Part shown: positions 30,829 to 63,980 of the stretch, one piece after another | Position numbering within the stretch: position 1 is the stretch's first letter | Layout of the letters: each line of letters begins with the position of its first letter | IMG/VR virus record: IMGVR_UViG_3300028364_000014 | Span: 1-64,000 of that record | Strand: one strand, 5' to 3' | DNA: 64,000 nt | The notes under the pieces: generated by a model | Databases searched by the model: none | What the model was told of the DNA's origin: nothing | Seen by the model: the letters and a program-made list of their open reading frames with translations, nothing else | Translations under genes and position numbers: made by a program

Positions 30829-33819
30829 TTATTTAATTCTTTTCTTTAATACCGCGTGGCCTAGTCCGTATTCCAATAGTGGGGGTGCTTGAAAACTTGA
30901 AGTGCCTTGAGATCCTAAATAATCAAAACTAGTCCCTACTCTACTACGCACTAAGCCACTTACACTATGAAGAATAGGACCATCTCCCTCTTCGAGTTCC
31001 CTCTCAACCTGTCTTGCTCCATGGGCTCCTAATATAAGTGCAGAATATAAATCCTTATTCATATGCTTAGTAGGAGTATCGAAATGCAATATACCAGTAG
31101 AAGTTTGAGTAACTACTATATTTAATAACTGTGATTTAAGCGTTATTATATTTATATAAGCCCTAGCTAATAAATCGTTAGTAGAATTAGATGGATTATC
31201 TGGAAATAAAAGACTCTTATCCTCAAACATAGCTTTTGTAGTAAAATTGGCATCAGCTATCCAAGTAGGATTAAAATTAACCATATCTAGTATATGTCTT
31301 CCTTCTAAATGTATATGATCTTGGTTTCCTCTATCAATAATAGGTTCGGTTTCTCCGTAACCCTCCTCTAATAAATCACATACTGCCTTTCCACCTCCGC
31401 CTTTATCCATGAATATTCTAATGATATTATATTGATTACAAAGTTGTTGTACTGATCTTGTAAGTCCTTGTGTGGTCTGCTTTTTAAGTTCTATTACATT
31501 AACTATTTTATTAGGTTTACCTATTTCAATAATAACCACACCACAACTGGCGCTTCCCCCCTGATTAGGGTCAATACCCATTATATACTGTTTATTAGGC
31601 GCTCCATTGAACTGTAAAGTAAAATCATTCCCTAAAGTACAATCATCTAATAGGGATGCCTTAAAAAATCCCTCTGAATCTGAAACCATGGCAGCTTCAT
31701 ATTCCATACTATACTCATGTCTAGACATAATACGTTTAGCTTCAGCAATATTATTATTATCCAAGAACCCCTCAGGTAAGTCCCAATAAGGTACTTGCCA
31801 CACTGCATAATCACAATCCTTACCTTGAGCTTCAGCTTCCGCCACCATCTTCCAATGGTCCCTCATACGTCGCCACATATGATTAAATTTATAATACCCT
31901 GAGGAAGTCATTACCATCTTGTTAACTTTTTCCTCAGCAAAATCATCAGCAGCAGCAAGACCAGCATTAATCAAACGAGTCTGTTCCTCTAGTCTACGAA
32001 CTCTTTCCATCGGTGCCAAAGAGGTTGCTCCCATTGGTCTTACTACCATATCCAAAGTTTGATCTGGAACTTGCGCTAACTCATCCACAAGAATTAGATA
32101 GAAACGTGATCCACGAATTTTACTACCATCTCCTAGTGGTAGTCCCTCAATATATGATGGAGTTTTACCAGCAACCGACTTAAATTTTAAATAAGCTGTG
32201 TCTGAACCACGAGTTGGTTTCTTTGCAGAAGCTTCTCTAAGAATTGAAGATTGATCATATAGTTTCTCTACTTCAGCAAATATCATTTTTGAATTGTGAT
32301 TAATAAACCCGTTAGCCCAATAACAGTGTTCATTTTTTACTTCTATATCTATTGTTTCTGAAAAGAAGTAATCAACCTCTTTAATTTTAACAAAGTATAA
32401 CCCTTGTTCATATAATTTTTTGGCTTTATTGTAATTATCCTTTATTAATTTATTTGTAAGACCAATAGCCCTAGCTAAACTTTCTTCTTGATTAAAATGG
32501 TTATCTATATAAGCATTAAGCTTTTCTTTCTTTCTTAAGCATCTAAATCCAACAGTATCATTGAATCTTTTGATAAAAGTTTGTCCTGTAATCCTAACTT
32601 TATAGGCTTCTGCACATTTAGACGGTTTATTTCCTTGCGATAATTGTCTTATACATGCCTTTTTACTTATACCAAAGTTAGACACTATACCTAAATTTAG
32701 TAGTATAGCCTGCACTTCTTTAGCTAGTTGTTTAGAAGAAGTACTAAAGGCAATTTCAGAACCTTTATTTTTTTGCACATAAAAACACCCATCTGTGTCA
32801 TATAAACCCTGTAAACAAGCTATTAAGTTATCTCGTGAAGCTTTTTTTAAAATACTAGGAATCTTTTTATCCAGAGCTGTTGTTTTAGTAAAACCACACT
32901 CTAATAAATACTGGGCTAGTTGCTTACAAAAGTATTGAATTTCCCAAGTATCATTCCTTCTATTCCTTCTATCTATCTTTTCTTCTTTATCTACACAAAA
33001 ATATCTTCTTAGATTATTCTCAAAAGAGTCTAATAAATCCTGGTCTTCACTTACAAAGTCTACACGCTGTTTTCTTTTATTTTTACTAACAGAAACACAG
33101 CCATCACCTAGTAAAAGACCCATCCAATAAGATAAAGAAGGTGTTAATTCTTTAGGTATTAAACAATTTTTAGTTCTCCAATCATGTTCAAATTCAAATT
33201 CAGGCATCGAGTTATCATTACCAAAATAATTAAATCCTGTTTTTATTGCTATATATTCATCTTTTATATCCTGTAAGTCTTTAAATTCAGTATCTAAATC
33301 ATCGTTTAAACACACAACGGCATGATCTATAGTACCAGACAATTCAAATCCTTTTGTAGTTTTTATATACTTACATGCTTTATCTTTATCTGTCCATTTA
33401 CTGACTACTGTATTATGATTAAAATTTGACTGTACTCTTGTTTTTCCTGGAATTACTTTATTATAAAAATCCTCTGTACCTGTATTTAATCCTTCATTTG
33501 TCCAAAACGTAGCAAGTGTGTCTGATTTTATTAACGATTGTCTAAATACTGGGCCAATTAGACCTACCCTATAACCTGGATACAACAAGCAACTTAATGC
33601 AGCTAAAGTACCGAGCATAAAAGTTTTTCCCACGCCACGTCCACAAATAGCTATGACGTAGTTCTTAAACCACATGTCTCTAAAAACCAATCGCTGAATA
33701 GGTGCTAAATCTACCCCTAGGAGCTCATAAGCGGCTGTACAAGGGTGAGCTCTATAAAACTCTATAAGTTCCTTACCTTGTACCAGCAACGCTTCCATGT
33801 TTTGTCTTTTTTTAGCCAT
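30829..33819 (-). CDS. terL: Terminase large subunit with intein
   Basis: Walker A CGRGVGKT, Walker B LILVDE, nuclease GIDP and IFMDKGGG, KDLYSAL; intein insert after GPVFRQ. Confidence 0.92.
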   Translation of the reverse strand: MAKKRQNMEALLVQGKELIEFYRAHPCTAAYELLGVDLAPIQRLVFRDMWFKNYVIAICGRGVGKTFMLGTLAALSCLLYPGYRVGLIGPVFRQSLIKSDTLATFWTNEGLNTGTEDFYNKVIPGKTRVQSNFNHNTVVSKWTDKDKACKYIKTTKGFELSGTIDHAVVCLNDDLDTEFKDLQDIKDEYIAIKTGFNYFGNDNSMPEFEFEHDWRTKNCLIPKELTPSLSYWMGLLLGDGCVSVSKNKRKQRVDFVSEDQDLLDSFENNLRRYFCVDKEEKIDRRNRRNDTWEIQYFCKQLAQYLLECGFTKTTALDKKIPSILKKASRDNLIACLQGLYDTDGCFYVQKNKGSEIAFSTSSKQLAKEVQAILLNLGIVSNFGISKKACIRQLSQGNKPSKCAEAYKVRITGQTFIKRFNDTVGFRCLRKKEKLNAYIDNHFNQEESLARAIGLTNKLIKDNYNKAKKLYEQGLYFVKIKEVDYFFSETIDIEVKNEHCYWANGFINHNSKMIFAEVEKLYDQSSILREASAKKPTRGSDTAYLKFKSVAGKTPSYIEGLPLGDGSKIRGSRFYLILVDELAQVPDQTLDMVVRPMGATSLAPMERVRRLEEQTRLINAGLAAADDFAEEKVNKMVMTSSGYYKFNHMWRRMRDHWKMVAEAEAQGKDCDYAVWQVPYWDLPEGFLDNNNIAEAKRIMSRHEYSMEYEAAMVSDSEGFFKASLLDDCTLGNDFTLQFNGAPNKQYIMGIDPNQGGSASCGVVIIEIGKPNKIVNVIELKKQTTQGLTRSVQQLCNQYNIIRIFMDKGGGGKAVCDLLEEGYGETEPIIDRGNQDHIHLEGRHILDMVNFNPTWIADANFTTKAMFEDKSLLFPDNPSNSTNDLLARAYINIITLKSQLLNIVVTQTSTGILHFDTPTKHMNKDLYSALILGAHGARQVERELEEGDGPILHSVSGLVRSRVGTSFDYLGSQGTSSFQAPPLLEYGLGHAVLKKRIK
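32293..33537 (-). mobile_element. Intein (415 aa) with LAGLIDADG endonuclease in TerL
   Basis: Starts SLIKSDT, ends YWANGFINHN followed by Ser+1; LLLGDGC and LQGLYDTDG motifs; removal gives GPVFRQ-SKMIF. Confidence 0.9.
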
Positions 33820-48192: not shown

Positions 48193-49533
48193 TTACCCTA
48201 TTGTTTTATCTTGTAGTAAATCAGCTATTTCTAATATATCACTTCTATATGAGTTCTGTAATTCAACATAAGCTATAGATCTGTGTGGTAGAACTCTAAG
48301 TAATTTTAATAGACCTGATTCTGATGGCTTAACTACGTTATATGTTTGTTTTAAATCACCAAGTAGTATCAACCTACCAGAAGCCGATGGACGACTTAGA
48401 ATCATGCTCATATAGTCTACAGTAATAAGTTGAACTTCATCTACGATTAGTGTGTCGTTATCTAGAAGAGATAGTCCTTGAATTGAATTTAAAGATATAG
48501 GCTCAAACTTTTCTTTAAAAATTATATCTTTAACGTAATCATAGCGTTTCTTTATGTCTTGACCTCTAGTATTTGAATAGATATAATATAGAGCGCTCAT
48601 AAAACCAGCAAGCCAGTCTTGCATTTTATCCATTTTATCCCCAGGAAGAAATCCCAACTCATACTTAGAATTAATTCCTATAGGTGCTCTCGACACAAAC
48701 ACTTTTTTATCTCGATCTTTAGCTAATGCCGCTGCTGAAGCCAGCAAAGTCTTACCAGAGCCCCATCTGCCGGTGATTAAGCAATGAGGGGCTTCTTTGA
48801 GTGCAAATATAGCGCATACTTGATAAGCATCTCTTGCTTTTACAGTAGTTTGTTCTACTTTTATTTCCCTATATTCAGGATTATCATCTATTTTAATAAA
48901 TACTTTTTTTATGGGATTATGTGCATATATAATCGTGTTAGGGGTAGGATTTTTAATAAATACAAAAAACCAGGAGTTTTCATCTAATGATTTTTCACTG
49001 GATCTTTCAAATAAATCAAATGTGTTTGAATAATCATTACCGTTTGGGTCATCACTAATGTATCTCCCATAACCAAATACACCTTCTTCACAATTCCAAT
49101 AAAGAGCGTCTTGTTCAATGTAAACATAAGGATTAAATAAATTATTTAACACAACATCAAAAAGCTTTACCATCACTCCTTGAGATTCAGCGATTATTGA
49201 CATTGACATATCTTTTGTAGCCAGTACTGCTCCGTGTTTTTTTGCGGAAGCTATAATAGCTTGATCATTATTGAACGTGCCATTAAACGCCTCAGTGTCA
49301 AATTCTATCTTATCTGGAAATTCTTTTTTAAAGTCTATAATAGCTCTTATAGCCTCTCTCGCACTATAAGAAGTGTCTGGTTTAAATTTATGTTTATCTA
49401 GTTCTTGTAATACAGTAATAGGCAGAATTAACTTTATATATTCTTTTGAAAGTTTAAATAAGATTTTTGAGTCATCAAGTAATAAGTTAGTATCAATAAC
49501 TACTTTAGTGTTGTTTTTTATTGACTTAAGCAT
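48193..49533 (-). CDS. phoH: PIN-PhoH protein
   Basis: N-terminal PIN VIDTNLLL, VLQELD, NNDQAI, LATKD; PhoH GRWGSGKT, LGFLPGD, LIVDEVQ, LLGDLKQ. Confidence 0.9.
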   Translation of the reverse strand: MLKSIKNNTKVVIDTNLLLDDSKILFKLSKEYIKLILPITVLQELDKHKFKPDTSYSAREAIRAIIDFKKEFPDKIEFDTEAFNGTFNNDQAIIASAKKHGAVLATKDMSMSIIAESQGVMVKLFDVVLNNLFNPYVYIEQDALYWNCEEGVFGYGRYISDDPNGNDYSNTFDLFERSSEKSLDENSWFFVFIKNPTPNTIIYAHNPIKKVFIKIDDNPEYREIKVEQTTVKARDAYQVCAIFALKEAPHCLITGRWGSGKTLLASAAALAKDRDKKVFVSRAPIGINSKYELGFLPGDKMDKMQDWLAGFMSALYYIYSNTRGQDIKKRYDYVKDIIFKEKFEPISLNSIQGLSLLDNDTLIVDEVQLITVDYMSMILSRPSASGRLILLGDLKQTYNVVKPSESGLLKLLRVLPHRSIAYVELQNSYRSDILEIADLLQDKTIG

Positions 49534-49925: not shown

Positions 49926-51413
49926 TTAGTAAGTCACCAAGCCGCAATTGTTTGTCAATTTACGACAACGTTTAATGCCAAAAGTATCTAATTTTTTTGG
50001 ATTAAGAATGTTCTCAAAAGTAATAACCTCACCTTTGTTTTGCACGCCTTTACAAACTTGTATCATTGATTCTACGTTGACAACATCACCTTTTCGGATC
50101 TTGTAGTCAGTGATTAAACTTCTCATTACTTTTTTTCCTGGGATTGCAACTATAACTGTTGAGTTAAGCTTCCCCTCAACCATGAGAGATTGTTTTAATT
50201 CGGTAAGACTCTTTTTCTTAGGGTCTTGTCCTGCCCGTCGTTTACGATTCCAGGCTACTATCTTTTTCTTTTTTTCCGGTATTGAGTCAAAAATCATATA
50301 TCTACGATCCGTAGATCTTAACGTAAATGACCGGGTGTGCCTAGGAAATTGTCTCATATTCAACTCAGAATTATAATCTTTCCAAGAGTAATCTTGTAAA
50401 TCCTGATTTCCTAAACTGTCGTTGAATGCAATGAGGCTTGCATCACTGGCATGAGATTTAATAATATTGTCTCGATTCCTAACGCCACTCGTAATATATC
50501 CGTAAGTGTCTTGAATTGGACATTTGTCTTCAAATTCATTCCAGATCGTTTTCATGACTGAATTTAAAACTCCAGCATCACGGTATCCGTTTACAGAAGT
50601 AGATTCCTTTGGACATTTTAATCCATTTTTGTGAACTTTGTTATGACAATTTTCACACAGCAATATTAAATTTTCAGGTCGATCTGAACCACCATTACTC
50701 TTCCAAGTGATATGATGAACTTCGTTTCTAATTTTACCAACATCTTTTTTACAGATTTGACATTGGTAATTGTCTCTATTCCTTACATAACTTTTTACGT
50801 TTTCAAAACCAAATTGTAATCCTTTTTGATACCAAAAAGATTGGACCTTTGGAGTAATCATCTTGTGGATATCAAATTTATTATACTCTAAATGAATTTT
50901 AACTTGTTCAATTGGAACCAACTTTAATAACTTTGCCAATACATTTCTATGCGATTGGATCAAATGAAGATGAGTAACTTGAAACTTATGTTTACTTCGA
51001 TTTTTCCAAATAGGGTGCTTGAACTTAGCATTTCCAGCCCCATACTTTTTTTTGATACCTTTTCGAGCCAGATATCTTCGACTGCGGCGATACATTCTTT
51101 TGGCATCAAGCCCTTCTTTGATCTTTGCTGTGCGTAGGTATACCTCTCCGTTAATAAGTTTAGTAATAACATCCCTTTGGATTTTAAATACTGCAAACCC
51201 AATGTTCGCATATCCAGGATCAATACCTATTCTAAACTCACAATTAATTGTTTCACTTTTATAAAATACTTTTGTTAATAATTGAACAATAATTACGTCT
51301 TTGTTTAATCGTTTTATAACTTTAGCTTTCTTGTTTCGAATCAACCTTCCCACCATATCGTGTTTTTTGGTAGGGTGGCCGATATTGTTTCTTGCGTCTA
51401 CAATGTAAATCAT
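49926..51413 (-). CDS. iscB: IscB RNA-guided endonuclease
   Basis: PLMP-like N-terminus (GHPT), RuvC-I GIDPG, Arg-rich RRSRR bridge helix, RuvC-II HLEYNKFD, HNH EVHH...PENLILLCENCH, RuvC-III SHASDA. Confidence 0.92.
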   Translation of the reverse strand: MIYIVDARNNIGHPTKKHDMVGRLIRNKKAKVIKRLNKDVIIVQLLTKVFYKSETINCEFRIGIDPGYANIGFAVFKIQRDVITKLINGEVYLRTAKIKEGLDAKRMYRRSRRYLARKGIKKKYGAGNAKFKHPIWKNRSKHKFQVTHLHLIQSHRNVLAKLLKLVPIEQVKIHLEYNKFDIHKMITPKVQSFWYQKGLQFGFENVKSYVRNRDNYQCQICKKDVGKIRNEVHHITWKSNGGSDRPENLILLCENCHNKVHKNGLKCPKESTSVNGYRDAGVLNSVMKTIWNEFEDKCPIQDTYGYITSGVRNRDNIIKSHASDASLIAFNDSLGNQDLQDYSWKDYNSELNMRQFPRHTRSFTLRSTDRRYMIFDSIPEKKKKIVAWNRKRRAGQDPKKKSLTELKQSLMVEGKLNSTVIVAIPGKKVMRSLITDYKIRKGDVVNVESMIQVCKGVQNKGEVITFENILNPKKLDTFGIKRCRKLTNNCGLVTY

Positions 51414-51419
51414 CTTTTC

Positions 51420-51675
51420 CCCTCTTAATAAATACCCATTGATCGGGCAAACTAAGAATAGTTCGGTTCGTCTCCCCCGACTTAATCAAAAGTAATACTG
51501 ATCTTCGTTACCTACTAATCAGCAATGAGGACTTGTAATGCTCCGCTTACCTCCATTGCTACGGACTGGGAGTGGCATCCGTAGGTGAACTCTCGATTAA
51601 ACGTCTGTTCAATCCTGAATTAAATCAGCTTGCTGTTGATTGCAAGCCCAAGTCCTTTAGGCTTGGGTAATTGAC
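51420..51675 (-). ncRNA. omegaRNA/HEARO-type scaffold of IscB
   Basis: About 255-nt structured noncoding region between the left end and iscB, with CACCTACGGATGCCACTCCCAGTCCGTAGC and GTCGGGGGAGAC elements typical of HEARO/omegaRNA. Confidence 0.8.
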
Positions 51676-55731: not shown

Positions 55732-56661
55732 TTAACTTCCAAAAATATTACGTGATTTAATTAGGGTATTATCTCCAGTCAGTTGTGGTTCTTGAGTATA
55801 TCCATTAATATTTAAAGTAGCTGTAATATCTTCATGTATATTAATCCAATTTTTATTAGAATTACTCTTAATTGTGTTAATTAGGTACGAAGTCATGGCA
55901 CCTTGCCACTTACCTTCTATATACGCATCAGCCGATGTTTGATTGTCTTTACAACCTGATAGAAGTACATACTCTTGATAGCTTTTAATTTCTTTATTAA
56001 GTCTATTTATAGGAGTATCCACATTATTTCGTATCTGAATATCAATCGGGGGACTTATGAATCTATCCTCCTGTTTTATAGACCTAGCCATTGAACCACT
56101 ATGACATGAATCACAAATGAATGTTAAAAACACTCCATTGGCTTTTTTATTGAAATTATGTCGAATAATGTCATCTGTTAATGGGTCATCCCAATTTAAA
56201 TCCGTAGGGCAAAGTATTTCATCTAAATGATCATTAAGTTCATCTCCATCACGATCTCTCACTTGAGACCCGTGCCCTGAAAAATGAAGAACCAATTCAT
56301 CACCTGGAACAGTGTGACTTAATAACCAGTCTATTCTACTTAAAATGTTCTTTTTAGTAGCTCTTTTGTCTACTAGTACTCTAACATTGTCTGATGGAAA
56401 CTTATAGATATTAACTAATACATCGTGCATAGCAACAGCGTCATTTACACAGCCTTTGAGATCTGAGTTAAGGCTTGAATCATAGATATTAATACCTATA
56501 ATAACGGCGAACTTAGATGGTTCCCTCTTAGCAGTAATACCCTCTTCTATGGTCTCATCTATAGTGGCGTAAATAGGGTTATTCTTTATCTCCCCTGTTG
56601 TTTCTGGAGTTTTTAATACTGTAGTAATCCAACCCCAAAAGCTTGTTAAAAAGTTTGTCAT
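55732..56661 (-). CDS. Metacaspase / peptidase C14 (caspase-like)
   Basis: AVIIGINIY, LKGCVNDA, HFSGHG (His), ICDSCHSG (Cys), LSGCKDNQTSAD, QEPQL. Confidence 0.92.
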   Translation of the reverse strand: MTNFLTSFWGWITTVLKTPETTGEIKNNPIYATIDETIEEGITAKREPSKFAVIIGINIYDSSLNSDLKGCVNDAVAMHDVLVNIYKFPSDNVRVLVDKRATKKNILSRIDWLLSHTVPGDELVLHFSGHGSQVRDRDGDELNDHLDEILCPTDLNWDDPLTDDIIRHNFNKKANGVFLTFICDSCHSGSMARSIKQEDRFISPPIDIQIRNNVDTPINRLNKEIKSYQEYVLLSGCKDNQTSADAYIEGKWQGAMTSYLINTIKSNSNKNWINIHEDITATLNINGYTQEPQLTGDNTLIKSRNIFGS

Positions 56662-58117: not shown

Positions 58118-58472
58118 ACTTCTTCACAAATGCAGCAGCCCAATAGGCAAACACTTCCTCAGGAAACTCACATTTGGCCGTATTATACATATGACAAACC
58201 ATTTGGCAGTTATTTTCTGTATATCCTTTGTTTGAATCTACTCTATCAATACTTGGGTAGTAGGGATTTACATACGGATCTCTGTGAGTCTTAAAAGGCA
58301 AGCCAGTGACCTCACAACGACCAGCATCCAATTTATCACGTATCCAGTTAGGTGTTAAACTAAACGGGATATTTTTTCGGCGGGCGCGCTTTTCAAGTTT
58401 TTGTAGTTTGTTGTTTAAATTACTAAAATAATTATCCATGGTTGGTTCCTTTTTTTTATCTTTTTCCCCCAT
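58086..58472 (-). CDS. Short His-Me/HNH-like endonuclease, paralogue of the C-terminal domain of 56990..58117
   Basis: CEVTGLPF...PSIDRVDSNKGYTENNCQMVC. Confidence 0.7.
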   Translation of the reverse strand: MGEKDKKKEPTMDNYFSNLNNKLQKLEKRARRKNIPFSLTPNWIRDKLDAGRCEVTGLPFKTHRDPYVNPYYPSIDRVDSNKGYTENNCQMVCHMYNTAKCEFPEEVFAYWAAAFVKKYEEDNNEIVL

Positions 58473-58548
58473 CTCTTCTTCGGAGGTAAGTCCTAATCGT
58501 GGTTGTTTGTAAGCAGTGCTTCAAAAATAAATAATCAATAGAAAGGTG

Positions 58549-58702
58549 TTCTGACGAGTTAGATACTAAAGGTCTTCAGTACTAAAGGTCTTCAGTACTA
58601 ATAGTTTAAGTACTAATAGTTTAAGTACTAATAGTTTAAGTACTAAAGGTCTTCAGTATTGATAGTTTAAGTACTAAAGGTCTTCAGTACTGATGAGTTA
58701 GA
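58549..58702. repeat. Mixed 15/16-bp tandem repeat array at the strand switch
   Basis: A=TACTAAAGGTCTTCAG, B=TACTAATAGTTTAAG, C=T(A/T)CTGA(T/C)GAGTTAGA in the order C A A B B B A B' A C. Confidence 0.9.
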
Positions 58703-58997
58703 TACTATGTAGTTACTGCCTATATAGTAGTTAGTTTAATATAGCCTAAAGGTACTACTATCGTGGTCTAATACAATTTTAGAACCCCCAAAATAAGTGG
58801 GACAGGGACACTGTAGTATGATAGAGTATTATTGCATACATACAATACATTATAGGCCCCTTACTTCTTATTTAGTAGAGTGCCTTTATGCGATGACAGC
58901 TCTATGATAAACATACCAGCCGGGTGAGTCGGTTTGATATGAGATCAAGTTTGATCCCCCCCCCTCCCCCTGGGAGGCAACTACAAAGGAGATTATT

Positions 58998-59231
58998 ATG
59001 ACTACCACACAAAAGACTTATGAGCAAGTAATCGAGACTAAGGAATCTTATATTGATGTATATCAGCCAGTTGCAGGTTGGAAACCTCAACTAATGGTTT
59101 GGATGGAAGAGGATGGCATGACTGGATTTGTATGTCTCAACACAAGCTACTTCGCATATGAAACAAGGGAGAAGGCTGTTGTTGAGGCTAAGCAGTGGGC
59201 TGAGGATGAGGATATAGCCTATGTAGAATAA
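58998..59231 (+). CDS. Early-region hypothetical protein (77 aa, acidic)
   Basis: AAGGAG RBS. Confidence 0.7.
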   Translation: MTTTQKTYEQVIETKESYIDVYQPVAGWKPQLMVWMEEDGMTGFVCLNTSYFAYETREKAVVEAKQWAEDEDIAYVE

Positions 59232-59234
59232 ACA

Positions 59235-59300
59235 ATCCGAAACGGGACTATACATCCCGTCTACAGCCTTAAGCAAGCTGTACTGATGAAGGTAGCTTAA
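59235..59300 (+). ncRNA. Hammerhead ribozyme (type II-like, open stem II)
   Basis: GAAAC-GGGA/UCCC-GUC stem III, UACAGC/GCUGUA stem I, CUGAUGA core; 2-bp stem II after an extra A; loop I UUAAGC can pair with the 3' GCUUAA. Confidence 0.75.
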
Positions 59301-59327
59301 TTAATATATAACTTAAGGAGACTTATC

Positions 59328-59516
59328 ATGACTAATTCAATCAACATTACTGACGCACCAAAATGTAAAACATTTGAAATGAATGGTAATACTTGTGAAG
59401 GTTGTTTGGTTGACCCTTGTCCTTGTGGAACCGATGACGCTAATTCACTTGAATACATCGATCATGTTGGATATTGTATAATTAACAAAAATAACGAAAT
59501 TGTGGAGGTGATGTAA
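59328..59516 (+). CDS. Cys-rich small protein (62 aa)
   Basis: AAGGAG RBS. Confidence 0.65.
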   Translation: MTNSINITDAPKCKTFEMNGNTCEGCLVDPCPCGTDDANSLEYIDHVGYCIINKNNEIVEVM

Positions 59517-59662
59517 TGATAAAGTTTATTAAACCTTTAGTAATGTTTACCACATCATTCAGCGCAGTATGGTACGCAGCATTCATTCTTGACCCAGACT
59601 TTGTTAAGTTTGTCTGGGAAGCAGTCAAATACACTACCCAGCATTGGCTGTGGATAGTGTAG
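59516..59662 (+). CDS. Small hydrophobic protein (48 aa), not in the ORF track
   Basis: GGAGG RBS; MIKFIKPLVMFTTSFSAVWYAAFILDPDFVKFVWEAVKYTTQHWLWIV. Confidence 0.55.
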   Translation: MIKFIKPLVMFTTSFSAVWYAAFILDPDFVKFVWEAVKYTTQHWLWIV

Positions 59663-59705
59663 ATTTTAACTCTTTCGTCTTGGGCAGGACGTTAACTTAC
59701 CCATC

Positions 59706-59773
59706 ACTCGTCTGAGCGAGTATAAACAGTCCTTAGGCTCAGAGCGTCGTCCCACTTCGGTGGGGCGGGTGGC
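59706..59773 (+). ncRNA. Pistol ribozyme, copy 1
   Basis: P1 ACUCG/CGAGU, loop UCUGAG pairing with CUCAGA (pseudoknot), UAAA linker, GCGU junction, P3 with UUCG loop, G-GU-GGC cleavage context. Confidence 0.85.
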
Positions 59774-59807
59774 AATAACGCCTTAATTAGTTAAATAGGA
59801 GTTTATT

Positions 59808-60095
59808 ATGAAAGTAAGAACAACTGCACTTATTATGTCGTCTATCCTCGATTCAGGACGCACCATTGATATGAGTGGGGCAAGTAACCTTCTTCAGTTT
59901 GGTAATAAAGCCAGTTACCTTGGTGGTGGGTGGTGGTACATCAGTGATAGTGGAGGAACATCATTGAAGAAAACCATTATGGCTATTAGGTCACTTACCA
60001 GGTCTGGTAAGGTGTGTGTGGAATGTGGAAAACTTCACATCTGTAATGACAAGTGTGTAAAATGCGCCAGTGCATCATCGCCTGAATACTGGTAA
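59808..60095 (+). CDS. Hypothetical protein with C-terminal zinc ribbon
   Basis: AGGAG RBS; CVECG...CVKC. Confidence 0.65.
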   Translation: MKVRTTALIMSSILDSGRTIDMSGASNLLQFGNKASYLGGGWWYISDSGGTSLKKTIMAIRSLTRSGKVCVECGKLHICNDKCVKCASASSPEYW

Positions 60096-60146
60096 TCAAC
60101 AGTCCTTTCGAATATTAAATATATAGATATTAAAAGGAGTATTACT

Positions 60147-60347
60147 ATGGAATTAAAGGAAGTGGGAAAAAGAGAACTAGCGGAACAGTACAATATTCCT
60201 GAAGAGTATTTAAGGTATATAGGACCCACTGATTGCTCAATGCTAGCTGGAGGAGGTAAACTTCATCAGTATAATATCCACCTCAAAGGACACCCGAACG
60301 ACAAATCGACGGTTGCATACAGACAAAAGGAGGTACAAAATGGTTAA
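60147..60347 (+). CDS. Hypothetical protein (66 aa)
   Basis: AAGGAG RBS. Confidence 0.65.
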   Translation: MELKEVGKRELAEQYNIPEEYLRYIGPTDCSMLAGGGKLHQYNIHLKGHPNDKSTVAYRQKEVQNG

Positions 60348-60744
60348 TGTATACGTAGACCTTGACGGCACCCTACTAGATAGCCGGCTTGATGATAAGT
60401 ACAAAGCCATCAGCACTCAGTATGGTAAGGGTTTTGCTGATGACTGGTATGAATCCACCTATTACGATACCCTTGAGCTCAATTTGGCTCTGTGGTGTCG
60501 TCTATTGGTATTAAAGGAAGAGGGTGCTTCTATTGTAGCCTGGACTAATAGACGAGAATCTAAGGCTGACATGACATTCAGTAATTTGGCTAAGCTTGGT
60601 ATTATGGATTTGTTTTCAGGATTTATGTTCTGTAACGGACAAAAACATACTATGCCACTCAGGGATGGAGTAGTATTTGAGAATGAGTTCGACAATGAGA
60701 TTGAATGTTCAGAATTTAATTTTATCCCAACATTTAAACTGTAA
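60340..60744 (+). CDS. HAD-superfamily hydrolase
   Basis: ATG at 60340 after AGGAGG; YVDLDGT motif I, AWTNR motif II. Confidence 0.75.
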   Translation: MVNVYVDLDGTLLDSRLDDKYKAISTQYGKGFADDWYESTYYDTLELNLALWCRLLVLKEEGASIVAWTNRRESKADMTFSNLAKLGIMDLFSGFMFCNGQKHTMPLRDGVVFENEFDNEIECSEFNFIPTFKL

Positions 60745-60755
60745 GGAGATTCAAG

Positions 60756-60848
60756 ATGGATAAATGGTTAGAAATTGTGTCTGGAATTGTGTGTGGGTTG
60801 CTGATTGTTGGTATGATATATATGGCAATGCTCGGAATGGCTAACTAA
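60756..60848 (+). CDS. 30-aa single-TM peptide, not in the ORF track
   Basis: AAGGAG RBS; MDKWLEIVSGIVCGLLIVGMIYMAMLGMAN. Confidence 0.55.
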   Translation: MDKWLEIVSGIVCGLLIVGMIYMAMLGMAN

Positions 60849-60860
60849 TAAGGAGGCATT

Positions 60861-61058
60861 ATGAAGGTAAGCAGATTTACTACAAAAAAGAATAACTATA
60901 GCAAGAGATACCTTGAGAAAGAGTATAGAGAGGAGTATTTGGTCGCTAAGTTATCAAAGAAATCCTCTACTCTTGCATACGATTTTAATTCTCCTACAGA
61001 AAATACAATAAACAACTGGGAAAGAACTTCAAATGGAGCAAAGATTTGGAGTTTTTAA
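60861..61058 (+). CDS. Hypothetical basic protein (65 aa)
   Basis: AAGGAGG RBS. Confidence 0.65.
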   Translation: MKVSRFTTKKNNYSKRYLEKEYREEYLVAKLSKKSSTLAYDFNSPTENTINNWERTSNGAKIWSF

Positions 61059-61094
61059 TATATTAACCTATAACTGCCCCTTACTTAGAGGGGC

Positions 61095-61156
61095 ACCACT
61101 AAAGCACCGTTGTCAGGGTTCCCAAGTCCTGGATGAGAAAACTGCTGAGGGGTGGT
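61095..61156 (+). ncRNA. Twister ribozyme candidate (P1 type)
   Basis: P1 ACCAC/GUGGU, L1 UAA opposite GAGGG, P2 AGCA/UGCU, P4 CAGG/CCUG with loop GUUCCCAAGU; T1 CCC/GGG; T2 pairing imperfect. Confidence 0.6.
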
Positions 61157-61383
61157 TACAATTATCACTATAAGGATAAATGCGTATGTTACTATTATGA
61201 TGTTCTTAATGGCCCTAAAGTGTTTTACCATCAACTACAGGTGTTGCTCCAAAATGTAGTGTAGTAGCTATCTAATACCTACGGGGCAAAATCACATCTT
61301 AGGATACCATAACTAAAAGATACGAGTGAACTTTTAAAAGCAATTCTATCTATATTTATAAATAACTAATAGGAGATTACACC

Positions 61384-62691
61384 ATGAAGACAATCACAGT
61401 TGAAAACAATCAGGTATTTATCACAAACACCATTACCAATGAGAAAGTAAAACATAACTATTCAATGAACAACCGACCACTCAGTGTTGTTGAACTGTAT
61501 ACGAGTATTGATCCTATAGATATTAGAAAATCTCGTGAAAAGAAAGAAATAACTGCATTGTGGCGAGCAGCTGGAGATGAGCTAGGGACTTCAGTAGCTA
61601 ACTTCTCCAGAATGTTAAATGGTGCGTGTTATAAAGCTTATATTAAAGACAATGAAGACCTACACAACAGGTTTGGGGTTGAGTACAAAAAAGTTGGAGG
61701 AAAAGTTAAAAGAGTCAGAACCCGTTTAGCTGTTGAAATGGTAAATACTTACTGTGAAGTAATACGACAATATATTGCTGACGGTAATACTCATTTAGCC
61801 GGATTTAGTATTCCGTTCGGTGAAGCTAGTGTAGCTAAAAAGAAATTAGGCAAAGGATTGTGGAAACAACTAAATAAGAATTCTAAAACTAAGAATGATT
61901 TAATATGTAAGATACTTAATGCGTACTCTGAACCTAAACTTGATACTACAGCTTATACAGCCATGTTGAATAATACACCATCTACAATACTCAGTATGGT
62001 AGACAGTGCCAATACATTGCTGGCTTTCTTTAATACGGAAAGTTCAACAGGGATGAAGGATACTGTTAAAAAGTCAATTCAGCACATAGGACTTCCTATG
62101 TACAAATTAGATTATGAAAGACTGCAACGTGTTATTGTATTGATTCGTGATACACACCGTATGCATCAAAACTTTAACCCTAATTGGTCTTTAACTAGAA
62201 TTAAAGAAGAACATCAAATAACAATAAACGAGCAGTTTGCCTTAAGACACTCTAAAGAGAGGTTTAGTTGGTTAAACCTCATTACTCAGTACTTTGAGGC
62301 TAATGGTAATAAAGCTGAACTCATGTGCTCAGCATATGATATAGCTATACTAGGTAAGGACCAAGGACATTACGTAGGTAATTATGCACGTTTCAGTAAA
62401 GATGCTAACTACGTTGTATATAGAATTACTGACTGTGAGGGAACGATCTCTACATTAGGGATTAGGCACCCAGATGAAACAAATCACTTATGTGATCAAC
62501 ACTACCTGAGATTTAATTATATAGTAGCTAATGAAGCTTGTTTATCCTTTGCAGCTAAAATTACCAGACAAGTAAAAAAGGAATTAGAGTTGATTGATAT
62601 ATCCAAAAAACAGGAACCTTTAAAACCTATCACACAAGCTATCGATTTTCCTCAAATTGAAGCTGATGATCCAGAAGACACCCCATTCTAG
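61384..62691 (+). CDS. PcfJ-like domain protein (435 aa)
   Basis: C-terminal WSLTRIKEEH...LGKDQGHYVGNYA...VVYRI..TLGI resembles the PcfJ HCVGxY region (Cys replaced by Tyr). Confidence 0.55.
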   Translation: MKTITVENNQVFITNTITNEKVKHNYSMNNRPLSVVELYTSIDPIDIRKSREKKEITALWRAAGDELGTSVANFSRMLNGACYKAYIKDNEDLHNRFGVEYKKVGGKVKRVRTRLAVEMVNTYCEVIRQYIADGNTHLAGFSIPFGEASVAKKKLGKGLWKQLNKNSKTKNDLICKILNAYSEPKLDTTAYTAMLNNTPSTILSMVDSANTLLAFFNTESSTGMKDTVKKSIQHIGLPMYKLDYERLQRVIVLIRDTHRMHQNFNPNWSLTRIKEEHQITINEQFALRHSKERFSWLNLITQYFEANGNKAELMCSAYDIAILGKDQGHYVGNYARFSKDANYVVYRITDCEGTISTLGIRHPDETNHLCDQHYLRFNYIVANEACLSFAAKITRQVKKELELIDISKKQEPLKPITQAIDFPQIEADDPEDTPF

Positions 62692-62697
62692 TCAATT

Positions 62698-62763
62698 ATC
62701 TGTTTGAGCAGGTACACAGGCCTTAAGCTCAAAGCGTCGCCTCACTTCGGTGGGGCGGGTGGC
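62698..62763 (+). ncRNA. Pistol ribozyme, copy 2
   Basis: P1 AUCUG/CAGGU, loop UUUGAG pairing with CUCAAA (compensatory change relative to copy 1), GCGU, P3 with UUCG, P2 GCC/GGC; linker UACAC instead of UAAAC. Confidence 0.8.
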
Positions 62764-62814
62764 AAAATGGACATTCCGTCCACAATTAAACCGTAATACA
62801 TAGGAGATTACACC

Positions 62815-63420
62815 ATGACTAACATTATCAAAAAGAATGCTAAAGTACTTAACAATCGTGAACTTATAACTGGAATGGGCGCTAATGGTATTGTGCCCTC
62901 TCTTAACAACAAAGGCACACTTATTTTTACTCATTGCCCTATGTGCGAAGCAGAGCTCCTTGCAGATAACCCTGGTTATACTAAAGCTATTCTTAGTAAT
63001 AAACCTTGGTATCAAGCTACGCCAGCTATTGTGTTCAAAATGCCTAATGGCTCTACTCTCAAGGCGTGCTGTTGTGGTTATAGAGAGCTAGTAATTATTA
63101 CACCTAAACCTAGGTGCTCTAACTGCGGTAGTGTTCTTAAGAACGAAGGGGACAGGTGCTATGGTCCTAACTGCCAGCCTCCTACACAACAGGAGCTGGA
63201 CTCCATTGCGACCGAGAAAAAGCAAGCTCAGGAGATAAAGGCTGCTGAATTGAAAGCCAAACAAGAGGCTAAGCAAAAAGCCACTAAACCTCCTGTCAAA
63301 CAGTGCGTAACTCCTGGATGTACAAACCCAGTGCCTGAGAGTCGTTTTGTTAGATGCGAGGCATGTCGTGCAACACGAAGAACCCCAAAGGAGGAGGCTT
63401 GTACTGAAGTTCAGATGTAA
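62815..63420 (+). CDS. Multi-zinc-finger protein (201 aa)
   Basis: AGGAG RBS; CPMC, CCC, CSNC..C...C, CVTPGC..CEAC. Confidence 0.65.
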   Translation: MTNIIKKNAKVLNNRELITGMGANGIVPSLNNKGTLIFTHCPMCEAELLADNPGYTKAILSNKPWYQATPAIVFKMPNGSTLKACCCGYRELVIITPKPRCSNCGSVLKNEGDRCYGPNCQPPTQQELDSIATEKKQAQEIKAAELKAKQEAKQKATKPPVKQCVTPGCTNPVPESRFVRCEACRATRRTPKEEACTEVQM

Positions 63421-63589
63421 TCTGCTGGCTACCGAAGATGAACTCATCTATCTCATGATAGATGGACTAACCTATATCTACTGCCTTGATAAAGCTAAGC
63501 ATCCATACTTCATTAAAACATTGAAGTATAAACCAGGCAAAGCTATTAACTATATCAAAGCAGAAGCCTATTGGACAGAGATGGGTTAA
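63347..63589 (+). CDS. Hypothetical small protein (start uncertain)
   Basis: Track ORF overlapping the previous gene; probable start downstream (ATG 63455). Confidence 0.4.
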   Translation: MLDARHVVQHEEPQRRRLVLKFRCNLLATEDELIYLMIDGLTYIYCLDKAKHPYFIKTLKYKPGKAINYIKAEAYWTEMG

Positions 63590-63641
63590 ATTAAACCTGG
63601 GCACCTGAGTAATTAAGGTGTCCAAATTAAGGAGAATTATC

Positions 63642-63980
63642 ATGCAAAAAGCACTAAAAACTGTTAAACGAGCTACCTATGCACAAAAACGACAAGAGGC
63701 TTTTGATATGTTGAACAACACATATGAGGAAGAAGGTGTTCTTCTGTGCAGTGGGGAATTTAAAATCAATTCTCTGATGGCTATGATGATGGCAAGATCT
63801 GCTTTTAAAGAGACTTATGGAGCACTCGCCCCAAGGTACTTCAACATACCGGCTGACGAGCTTCCAGGAACTGAAGTACACCCAGGTGTATATATTTCAC
63901 GAGATGAGAATTCTCATTATTCTTTGGAGTACGAAGACGGTTTCCAAATGGAGGAATTTATTCAACAATGGGTATGTTAA
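63642..63980 (+). CDS. Hypothetical protein (112 aa)
   Basis: AAGGAG RBS before ATG 63642. Confidence 0.65.
   Translation: MQKALKTVKRATYAQKRQEAFDMLNNTYEEEGVLLCSGEFKINSLMAMMMARSAFKETYGALAPRYFNIPADELPGTEVHPGVYISRDENSHYSLEYEDGFQMEEFIQQWVC

What the first reader, a model, noticed from the sequence alone, without database searches (positions are those of the whole stretch)
59235..59300. Hammerhead with minimal stem II, extra core A and a loop I / 3'-tail pseudoknot
Seen: perfect stems I and III and the canonical CUGAUGA / GAAA / GUC core. Stem II is only 2 bp (GG/CC) after an additional A, while loop I UUAAGC is complementary to GCUUAA just downstream. Inference: a type II hammerhead stabilised by a pseudoknot, cleaving after C59261, 67 nt upstream of the next start codon.
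Basis: partly seen in the sequence, partly recalled or inferred. Interest (0 to 1): 0.6.

Follow-up and report, generated by a model that had tools for sequence, protein, structure and literature searches.

The report
Type II hammerhead ribozyme in phage
This is a genuine but ordinary self-cutting RNA (a type II hammerhead ribozyme) sitting between two small genes of a giant lake-water phage, one of several ribozymes that punctuate the same gene cluster.

Summary
Window 59235-59301 (+) holds a complete type II hammerhead: CUGAUGA, GAAA and GUC core, perfect 6-bp stems I and III, an open 2-bp stem II, one extra A between A9 and G10.1, and a 6-bp loop I / 3'-tail pseudoknot. The predicted cut is after C59261.

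- **Score:** Rfam Hammerhead_II gives 36.6 bits, against a cut-off of 37. A loose descriptor finds it once in the 238-kb genome and never in 80 shuffles.
- **Not unusual:** the "unusual" traits are the family norm. A 2-bp stem II and this pseudoknot define the published type II consensus.
- **Extra A:** this is a known minor variant. It recurs in about 17 other phage contigs, where covariation supports both the bulged-A register and the pseudoknot.
- **Context:** a 238-kb lake / salt-lake virus record. The hammerhead lies 30 nt after one stop codon and 67 nt before the next start. Two pistol ribozymes and a twister-like motif lie on the same strand within 3.5 kb.
- **Strain variation:** a co-occurring strain carries an HDV-like ribozyme at the same junction.

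It most likely cuts polycistronic phage mRNA. Cleavage itself is untested, because no RNA data exist. Verdict: new member of a known kind, modest interest.

The parts
59235..59301 (+). Whole type II hammerhead ribozyme (extent of the Rfam Hammerhead_II match)
   Evidence: RF02276 at 36.6 bits, model positions 1-66 of 66. It is the only hit of my own descriptor in the genome, with 0 hits in 80 shuffles.
59237..59238 (+). Stem II 3' strand, C11.2 and C11.1. It pairs with G59292 and G59291.
   Evidence: Sequence. CG pairs are invariant in the 18 aligned extra-A hammerheads, although the search pattern fixed them. The next pair outward is U59236 with U59293, a mismatch here. In relatives that pair is GC 10, GU 3, AU 2.
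59239..59241 (+). Core G12 A13 A14
   Evidence: Sequence; matches the Rfam consensus.
59242..59260 (+). Stem III hairpin: ACGGGA 59242-47 pairs with UCCCGU 59255-60, including A15.1-U16.1. The loop is 59248-54.
   Evidence: Sequence; present in the MFE and centroid folds.
59261..59261 (+). C17. The predicted scissile bond is 3' of this base (GUC triplet 59259-61).
   Evidence: Position relative to the core. The cleavage chemistry is inferred from the hammerhead family and was not measured.
59262..59282 (+). Stem I hairpin: UACAGC 59262-67 pairs with GCUGUA 59277-82. Loop I is 59268-76.
   Evidence: Sequence; present in the MFE and centroid folds.
59269..59274 (+). Pseudoknot 5' strand (UUAAGC in loop I)
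   Evidence: Exact complement of 59295-59300. The equivalent loop I / tail helix covaries in relatives. It beats all 2000 tail shuffles.
59283..59289 (+). Core C3-A9 (CUGAUGA)
   Evidence: Sequence; Rfam alignment.
59290..59290 (+). Extra A between A9 and G10.1 (bulged)
   Evidence: Rfam treats it as an insertion. The bulged-A register is supported by covariation of the third stem II pair in relatives. The alternative register would give G-G mismatches in most relatives.
59291..59292 (+). Stem II 5' strand, G10.1 and G10.2
   Evidence: Sequence.
59295..59300 (+). Pseudoknot 3' strand (GCUUAA), 2 nt after stem II
   Evidence: Sequence. [quoted passage not shown]
58998..59231 (+). Upstream ORF, 77 aa, no family match. 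Its stop codon ends 30 nt before the cut.
   Evidence: 97% identical in variant strain L062.
59328..59516 (+). Downstream ORF, 62 aa, Cys-rich, no family match. Its start codon is 67 nt after the cut.
   Evidence: 69% identical in variant strain L062.
59706..59774 (+). Context: pistol ribozyme 1, same strand, in the next intergenic gap
   Evidence: RF02679 at 71.3 bits, gathering score 34.5.
61096..61155 (+). Context: candidate type-P1 twister ribozyme lacking P3, same strand
   Evidence: RF03160 at 24.5 bits (gathering score 67.2). E is 0.0043 locally and 6.7e-4 in the genome. My own descriptor gives 1 hit against 3 in 200 shuffled genomes.
62698..62764 (+). Context: pistol ribozyme 2, same strand, 7 nt after the stop of the 435-aa ORF
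   Evidence: RF02679 at 49 bits.

Best explanation
Window 59235-59301 (+) encodes a functional type II hammerhead self-cleaving ribozyme of the pseudoknot-stabilised kind (Rfam RF02276).

How it most likely works:
- The + strand gene cluster of this roughly 238-kb phage is transcribed through the site.
- Stems III and I fold as hairpins.
- The 3' tail GCUUAA pairs with loop I UUAAGC. This pseudoknot holds stem I parallel to the 2-bp stem II and so completes the CUGAUGA / GAAA core.
- The 2'-OH of C59261 attacks its 3' phosphate.
- The 5' product ends in a 2',3'-cyclic phosphate just after the stem III hairpin, 30 nt past the stop codon of the 77-aa ORF.
- The 3' product starts with a 5'-OH at U59262. 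It carries the stem I hairpin and then the ribosome-binding site and ORF at 59328.
- After the cut only two stem II base pairs hold the halves together, so they should separate and the cut should be effectively irreversible.

The likely biological effect is to divide a polycistronic phage transcript into separately stable or translatable pieces. Two pistol ribozymes and a twister-like motif in the following intergenic gaps would do the same.

Shown: the motif, its statistical significance, its fit to the family, and covariation in relatives. Inferred: cleavage itself, dependence on the pseudoknot, transcription through the site, and the physiological purpose.
For: - **Core and stems:** complete core and perfect stems.
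- **Rfam score:** RF02276 at 36.6 bits, E 8.1e-7 in the genome.
- **Chance:** unique in 476 kb of two-strand sequence and absent from 80 shuffles.
- **Relatives:** 18 distinct extra-A type II hammerheads from IMG/VR phage contigs. 92.9% of cells are paired against 67% in shuffles. The covariation score is 0.735 against 0.21, reached by 0 of 500 shuffles. Slid controls give 28-41% paired.
- **Unselected features:** the third stem II pair and the pseudoknot were not used to pick these sequences, yet both covary. The third pair is GC 10, GU 3, AU 2. The pseudoknot helix is 76% paired, and 3 of its 4 pairs show changes on both sides. No tail shuffle out of 2000 reaches the observed complementarity.
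- **Family membership of the variant:** sibling extra-A hammerheads score up to 67.9 bits in Rfam.
- **Published tests:** in Perreault 2011, pseudoknot deletions lowered k_obs 20-fold to more than 100-fold and compensatory mutants restored it. The extra A10 in CChMVd lowers the rate only moderately.
- **Placement:** the site is intergenic, on the gene strand, 4 nt after a stop codon. Two pistols and a twister-like motif lie on the same strand within 3.5 kb.
- **Natural swap:** in strain L062 the same junction lies between orthologous ORFs (97% and 69% identity). It carries an HDV-like ribozyme whose predicted cut is 34 nt after the same stop codon. This suggests that cleavage at this place, not this particular sequence, is what is kept.
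Against: - No RNA data exist. All 24 runs that hold the phage are DNA metagenomes, so neither transcription nor cleavage is observed.
- The score is 0.4 bits under Rfam's curated threshold.
- Stem II has only 2 bp, where most extra-A relatives have 3.
- The pseudoknot is A/U-rich (duplex energy -6.3 kcal/mol). Taken alone it has about a 3% chance expectation.
- The only other contig carrying this hammerhead allele (L011/L048, 99.9% identical) shows no change in it, so there is no covariation at this exact locus.
- Stems I and III of the comparison set were selection criteria, so their pairing statistics are partly circular.
- The physiological role of phage hammerheads is unproven in general (PMC6765202).
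Confidence: 0.85

Rival explanations
1. A decaying or crippled hammerhead relic. The motif descends from a real ribozyme, but the extra A, the 2-bp stem II with a U-U next pair, and the A/U-rich pseudoknot leave it with little activity. It persists only because it arose recently.
For: Sub-threshold Rfam score. Stem II is shorter than in most extra-A relatives. The region is hypervariable between strains and this segment is replaceable.
Against: No core position deviates. Perreault 2011 measured more than 1.2 per min for a natural type II hammerhead with a 1-bp stem II and a 6-bp pseudoknot, and found that lengthening stem II reduced activity. An extra A at this position costs only a moderate rate loss in CChMVd. 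The allele that replaces it in L062 is another intact-looking self-cleaver, which argues for selection on cleavage.
Confidence: 0.08
2. The ribozymes here serve chiefly as boundary or recombination modules of mobile gene cassettes, or as insulators. In this view their conserved sequences at cassette edges matter for gene shuffling between co-infecting phages, rather than for tuning expression of the flanking genes.
For: Strain L060 has a 1.39-kb insertion at window position 60105. It begins with an HDV-like ribozyme and ends shortly after a 44-bit type II hammerhead. In L062 the hammerhead is exchanged together with the ribosome-binding site and the first 18 codons of the next ORF. The two pistols are 89% identical over 53 nt. 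Other phage contigs carry arrays of 5-8 type II hammerheads in 2-4 kb.
Against: This is correlation only, from three variant contigs. It is not exclusive of the RNA-processing role and still requires an active ribozyme. The replaced block in L062 does not end at the ribozyme's edge on the right side.
Confidence: 0.1
3. Chance resemblance, or a different element such as a terminator or RNase III hairpin pair that happens to contain hammerhead-like words.
For: A terminator-like hairpin call overlaps stem III on the opposite strand.
Against: 0 hits in 80 shuffled genomes. E is 8.1e-7. No U-tract follows either hairpin on the + strand. No - strand gene runs into the site. Terminator-like calls in the region (6 against a mean of 3.4, sd 2.1, in shuffles) are not clearly above chance.
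Confidence: 0.01

Closest known systems
Type II hammerhead ribozymes with a loop I / 3'-tail pseudoknot (Rfam RF02276; Perreault et al. 2011, PMC3088659)
   Same: Same circular permutation: stems I and III capped, stem II open. Same invariant core. Short 2-bp stem II. The pseudoknot joins loop I to the nucleotides just 3' of stem II. The setting is intergenic, in phage or prophage DNA, next to other ribozymes.
   Different: One inserted A between A9 and G10.1. The tail and pseudoknot are A/U-rich (GCUUAA) rather than the consensus AGCC. The score is 36.6 bits against a cut-off of 37. The host is a roughly 238-kb lake / salt-lake phage.
CChMVd plus-strand hammerhead with extra A10 (De la Pena & Flores 2001, as summarised in PMC3705267). 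[quoted passage not shown]
   Same: An additional nucleotide, also an A in CChMVd, lies between A9 and G10.1, and the rest of the core is canonical.
   Different: Those occur in a plant viroid and in eukaryotic retroelements rather than in phage DNA, and they are not type II. The viroid uses loop-loop contacts, not a pseudoknot.
Bacterial and phage loci where different self-cleaving ribozyme classes cluster and replace each other. This observation led to pistol, hatchet and twister-sister (summarised in PMC6765202 and PMC8216279).
   Same: Hammerhead, two pistols and a twister-like motif lie on one strand within 3.5 kb. A different class, HDV-like, sits at the identical junction in a sister strain.
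   Different: Here the exchange is seen between near-identical co-occurring strains of one jumbo-sized phage. It involves hammerhead against HDV-like, rather than hammerhead against twister.

Membership tests
Hammerhead ribozyme, type II (RF02276) | Invariant core: C3 U4 G5 A6 N7 G8 A9, G12 A13 A14, A15.1-U16.1, and H17 not G | tested here: met
   CUGAUGA 59283-89, GAA 59239-41, A59242-U59260, C59261.
Hammerhead ribozyme, type II (RF02276) | Three-way junction with stems I and III closed by loops and stem II open (type II permutation) | tested here: met
   Stem III 6 bp with a 7-nt loop; stem I 6 bp with a 9-nt loop; the stem II strands lie at the two ends.
Hammerhead ribozyme, type II (RF02276) | Watson-Crick 10.1-11.1 pair directly next to the core | tested here: met
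   G59291-C59238 pair is present, but it is separated from A9 by one inserted A. Register supported by covariation of the third pair in 18 relatives.
Hammerhead ribozyme, type II (RF02276) | Pseudoknot of 4 bp or more between loop I and the nucleotides immediately 3' of stem II (majority feature of the family) | tested here: met
   6 Watson-Crick pairs, 59269-74 with 59295-300, after a 2-nt spacer. Covaries at family level.
Hammerhead ribozyme, type II (RF02276) | Rfam curated gathering score (37 bits) | tested here: not met
   36.6 bits, 0.4 bits short. Other extra-A members score 36.0-67.9 bits.
Hammerhead ribozyme, type II (RF02276) | Site-specific self-cleavage 3' of H17 giving 2',3'-cyclic phosphate and 5'-OH ends | not testable with these tools
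   No RNA run holds the phage. A bench assay is needed.
HDV-like ribozyme (the allele in strain L062 and the element in L060, both outside the window) | Nested double pseudoknot: P1 of 7 bp, P2, P3 of 3 bp, L3 with a CC that pairs with a GG (P1.1), and J4/2 with a C | tested here: met
   Descriptor hits at L062:1862-1935 and L060:147-203. The strict descriptor gives 0.1 hits per shuffled 476 kb. P1 and P2 differ by compensatory changes between the two. Rfam gives only 13-24 bits.
HDV-like ribozyme (the allele in strain L062 and the element in L060, both outside the window) | G1-U37 wobble at the cleavage site | tested here: inconclusive
   Present in L060 (G-U). L062 has A-U at that pair.

The most novel reading that the evidence does not exclude
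This intergenic junction may be a 'ribozyme slot' in a hypervariable early-gene region of a jumbo-sized phage. Unrelated self-cleaving classes are exchanged between co-occurring strains: type II hammerhead here, HDV-like in strain L062. Ribozymes also bound the insertion/deletion cassettes, as in L060. On this reading, self-cleaving ribozymes are the functional and possibly recombinational punctuation of mobile phage gene cassettes. The ribozyme-free gaps of the same cluster would then be good places to look for unknown self-cleaving classes.
Probability: 0.3. Interest if true: 0.55.

Novelty: new member of a known kind. Interest (0 to 1): 0.3.

Why it matters
By itself this adds one more type II hammerhead, just under Rfam's threshold, to the thousands already known.

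Its value lies in the context. One phage population offers a natural experiment: the same junction between orthologous genes carries either a hammerhead or an HDV-like ribozyme. Pistol and twister-like ribozymes occupy the neighbouring gaps. The biological purpose of bacterial and phage self-cleaving ribozymes is still called 'largely elusive' (PMC6765202). A compact multi-class locus with natural swaps is therefore a convenient system for testing whether mRNA cutting, transcript insulation or cassette exchange is what is selected.

It also shows that extra-nucleotide variants of the core can fall below curated cut-offs and be missed by routine annotation.

Tried and rejected
- **Whole-window Rfam scans** did not list the hammerhead. 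It appears only when the region is searched alone or through the genome search.
- **Orthologous copies for covariation.** Flanking-protein searches in IMG/VR found only one contig, 99.9% identical. The metagenome scan gave the source contig and three variants, none with a diverged hammerhead at this site. Covariation therefore had to come from unrelated extra-A hammerheads.
- **Expression evidence.** All 24 holders are DNA metagenomes kept as contigs. Laying four of them shows variants but no RNA ends.
- **A switch between the pseudoknot and sequestration of the ribosome-binding site.** The tail can pair with UUAAG 59313-17, but the fold is not better than shuffles (z = -0.28). The CUUAAGGAG context is a ribosome-binding-site consensus repeated at other genes. 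Rejected as unsupported.
- **Terminator or promoter readings.** Sigma-70-like sites are at chance level, 19 found against 19.1 expected. No + strand terminator lies at the site.
- **Alternative stem II register** (A59290 opposite C59238, then G-C, G-U, U-A). It would put G opposite G in most relatives. Rejected.
- **Other ribozyme classes in the genome.** Hammerhead types I and III, twister-sister, hatchet and HDV-F-prausnitzii gave nothing. No further Rfam ribozymes above threshold lie at 63.9-203 kb, only tRNAs. Positions 203-238 kb were covered only by my own descriptors and the family searches.
- **A pattern for the HDV-like element with its conserved leader** in IMG/VR gave 0 matches.
- **Pfam and PHROGs on the ten + strand ORFs** gave only a weak HAD-like hit for 60313-60744.
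- The large protein searches, structure prediction and complex prediction were not used because nothing rested on them.

Full report
**1. The observation.**
- CC 59237-38 and GAA 59239-41.
- Stem III: ACGGGA pairs with UCCCGU (59242-47 with 59255-60, including A15.1-U16.1), with a 7-nt loop.
- C17 is C59261.
- Stem I: UACAGC pairs with GCUGUA (59262-67 with 59277-82), with a 9-nt loop.
- CUGAUGA 59283-89, one additional A (59290), and GG 59291-92.
- After a 2-nt spacer, GCUUAA 59295-300 is the perfect complement of loop I UUAAGC 59269-74.
- The next ATG is at 59328, 67 nt after C59261. The upstream ORF's stop codon ends at 59231, 30 nt before the cut.

**2. Is it more than chance?**
- Rfam's Hammerhead_II model (RF02276) matches 59235-59301 over its full length at 36.6 bits. 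E is 3.5e-6 in the 251 nt searched and 8.1e-7 for the whole 237,910-bp record.
- This is 0.4 bits under the gathering score of 37, so the two whole-window scans did not report it.
- I wrote a deliberately loose type II descriptor: stems I and III of at least 4 bp, stem II of at least 2 bp, and 0 or 1 inserted nucleotide. It finds this site and nothing else on either strand of the genome. It finds nothing in 80 dinucleotide-preserving shuffles of the genome.
- MFE and centroid folds recover stems III and I.
- The pseudoknot on its own is weaker evidence. 2.9% of random 10-mers from this A/T-rich genome can form 6 contiguous pairs (G-U allowed) with loop I.

**3. The 'unusual' features are the family norm.**
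- Perreault et al. [quoted passage not shown] - They showed by deletion and compensatory mutation that the pseudoknot is needed for fast cleavage. They also showed that lengthening stem II lowers activity.
- The Rfam model annotates only two stem II pairs followed by an 8-nt tail.
- The extra nucleotide between A9 and G10.1 is also known. The CChMVd plus-strand hammerhead has an extra A10 there with a moderate rate cost (PMC3705267). Penelope-like-element hammerheads conserve a nucleotide at that position (PMC4209133).

**4. Relatives and covariation.**
- The flanking proteins have no relatives in IMG/VR except one contig 99.9% identical to the window, with an identical hammerhead.
- I therefore collected phage hammerheads sharing the CC...GG stem II and the extra A, using a pattern scan of IMG/VR. 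It gave 46 matches in 44 loci. About 22 distinct ones fold as type II hammerheads.
The extra-A form is therefore a recurrent minority.
- I aligned 18 of these sequences, including the window. On that alignment 92.9% of cells pair, against 67% in shuffles and 28-41% in slid controls. The covariation score is 0.735 against 0.21, reached by 0 of 500 shuffles.
- Stems I and III were selection criteria, so those numbers are partly circular. Two features were not used for selection.
  - The third stem II pair is GC 10, GU 3, AU 2 and unpaired 3; the window is one of the unpaired, with U-U. This supports the bulged-A register and rules out the shifted one.
  - The loop I / tail helix is 76% paired, with changes on both sides at 3 of 4 positions.
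- No shuffle of the tails out of 2000 reaches the observed loop-tail complementarity.
- Other extra-A members score 36.0-67.9 bits in RF02276, so the variant lies inside the family as Rfam models it.

**5. Context.**
- The window is the first 64 kb of a 237,910-bp IMG/VR virus record (CheckV completeness 87%). Near-identical DNA is found in lake-water and salt-lake metagenomes from 24 studies.
- Genes run on the - strand up to about 58.5 kb and on the + strand from 58998.
- The hammerhead is in the first intergenic gap of the + strand cluster of small ORFs, which have no family matches.
- On the same strand lie pistol ribozymes at 59706-59774 (71.3 bits) and 62698-62764 (49 bits).
- A twister-like motif lacking P3 lies at 61096-61155. 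RF03160 gives 24.5 bits, with E 6.7e-4 in the genome. My own descriptor gives 1 hit against 3 in 200 shuffled genomes.
- No other ribozyme class was found elsewhere in the genome.
- Clustering of different self-cleaving classes near phage genes is an established pattern. It led to the discovery of pistol, hatchet and twister-sister (PMC6765202; PMC8216279).

**6. Strain variation.**
- Laying DNA contigs of four runs on 58400-63600 showed a 12-kb contig in which 59236-59390 is replaced by 170 other letters.
- The metagenome scan recovered that variant as L062. The upstream ORF is 97% identical and the downstream ORF 69% identical. The hammerhead is absent.
- In its place, at L062:1862-1935, is an element with all parts of an HDV-like ribozyme:
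  - P1 of 7 bp;
  - P2 with 7 of 8 pairs;
  - P3 GCC/GGC;
  - L3 with a CC that pairs with the following GG;
  - a P4 hairpin;
  - J4/2 with C-UAA.
- A second, P4-less copy sits at L060:147-203. It lies at the left edge of a 1.39-kb insertion at window position 60105. The insertion also carries a 315-aa ORF and a 44-bit type II hammerhead.
- The two HDV-like copies differ by compensatory changes in P1 and by wholly different but complementary P2 strands.
- The strict descriptor yields 0.1 hits per shuffled 476 kb. Rfam scores are low, 13-24 bits; my reading is that covariance models cannot score the nested pseudoknots.
- The predicted HDV-like cut is 34 nt after the same stop codon, against 30 nt for the hammerhead. 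This natural swap suggests that cleavage at this position is the conserved property.
- The literature already calls hammerhead and twister sites 'apparently interchangeable', so this is an instance of a known pattern, not a new principle.

**7. Mechanism and function.**
- I take the element to be an active ribozyme that cuts read-through transcripts after C59261.
- The upstream message would end in a stem III hairpin with a 2',3'-cyclic phosphate. The downstream message would begin with a 5'-OH and the stem I hairpin.
- With only two stem II pairs joining the halves, the products should dissociate.
- Processing of polycistronic transcripts into pieces of different stability or translatability is the function suggested in the literature. 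It remains unproven.
- I found no support for a pseudoknot / ribosome-binding-site switch or for a terminator.
- No RNA data exist for this phage, so cleavage and transcription are inferred.

**8. Verdict.**
The features flagged as special are standard for the family or are known variants. This is a new, slightly sub-threshold member of a known ribozyme family in a typical setting. The multi-class ribozyme island and the hammerhead / HDV-like allelism give it some extra value as a study system.

Noticed in passing
window 61096-61155 (+): Candidate type-P1 twister ribozyme without P3. It lies in the 326-nt gap between ORF 60861-61058 and ORF 61384-62691. It has P1 CCAC/GUGG, the UAA cleavage loop, P2 AGCA/UGCU, P4 CAGG/CCUG with a UCCCAAG loop, and GAGGG. 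Rfam gives 24.5 bits (gathering score 67.2), with E 6.7e-4 in the genome. My own descriptor gives 1 hit against 3 in 200 shuffles.
   Followed up: partly
window 59706-59774 and 62698-62764 (+): Two pistol ribozymes above the Rfam threshold (71.3 and 49 bits), 89% identical over 53 nt. Each lies in an intergenic gap of the same gene cluster.
   Followed up: partly
L062:1832-1992, replacing window 59236-59381: A sister strain (metagenome contig Ga0136555_1000208) has an HDV-like ribozyme (L062:1862-1935) where the window has the hammerhead. Its first P1 pair is A-U instead of the usual G-U wobble.
   Followed up: partly
L060:125-1511, inserted at window position 60105: A 1.39-kb strain-specific cassette. 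It holds a P4-less HDV-like ribozyme (147-203), a 315-aa ORF with no Pfam match, and a type II hammerhead (1250-1320, 44 bits) with two extra U between A9 and stem II, followed by about 190 nt of unassigned sequence.
   Followed up: partly
L062:1834-1861 and L060:121-146: Both HDV-like elements are preceded by a conserved leader of about 30 nt (GUCCU.AG.AAGACGUUAAA..GCUUA). It can form a small hairpin ending at the cleavage site. It gives a weak GP20-b match of 16 bits. Its first bases (AGUCC) are also present at the empty site in the window, 60101-60105. No match was found in IMG/VR with a combined pattern.
   Followed up: partly
window 49926-51413 (-) and 51492-51675 (-): An IscB-like ORF (RRXRR plus HNH domains) with a sub-threshold HEARO / omega-RNA-like match just upstream (46.5 bits, gathering score 83). 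A second copy of the element, about 85% identical, lies at genome 89740-90930.
   Followed up: no
window 58548-58707: Tandem array with period 15/31 (AGTACTAAAGGTCTTC and AGTACTAATAGTTTA units, about 6.5 copies). It lies in the divergent intergenic region between the - and + strand gene blocks and is bracketed by a 21-nt direct repeat. Copy number differs between strains: 15-16-nt deletions appear in runs X3 and X8. It may be an iteron or regulatory array.
   Followed up: no
window 58857-58993 and 59826-59914: Further strain-variable patches. 58857-58993 is replaced by 136 other letters in three runs. A dense cluster of substitutions lies at the start of ORF 59808-60095.
   Followed up: no
window 55732-56661 (-), 48193-49533 (-), 30829-33819 (-): A caspase-domain (Peptidase_C14) protein; a PIN plus PhoH-like protein; and a 995-aa ORF with an intein splicing domain and a LAGLIDADG endonuclease.
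   Followed up: no
genome about 139-158 kb (L052:15726 to L053:14722): A block of about 16-18 tRNA genes on the + strand of the same virus record. One has an odd anticodon loop and one carries a roughly 60-nt insertion according to Rfam coordinates.
   Followed up: no
L076 (IMGVR_UViG_3300038412_000035) and L087 (IMGVR_UViG_3300022548_000077): Phage contigs with 8 matches to the type II hammerhead pattern in about 4 kb, and 5 in about 2.3 kb. These are extreme ribozyme arrays.
   Followed up: no
window 61369-61387 and 62800-62818; 59310-59330 and 63624-63644: Translation-initiation regions are repeated almost verbatim in front of different genes. One pair is a 19-nt identical copy and the other is 90% identical over 21 nt. 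This suggests a shared ribosome-binding-site module downstream of the ribozymes.
   Followed up: no
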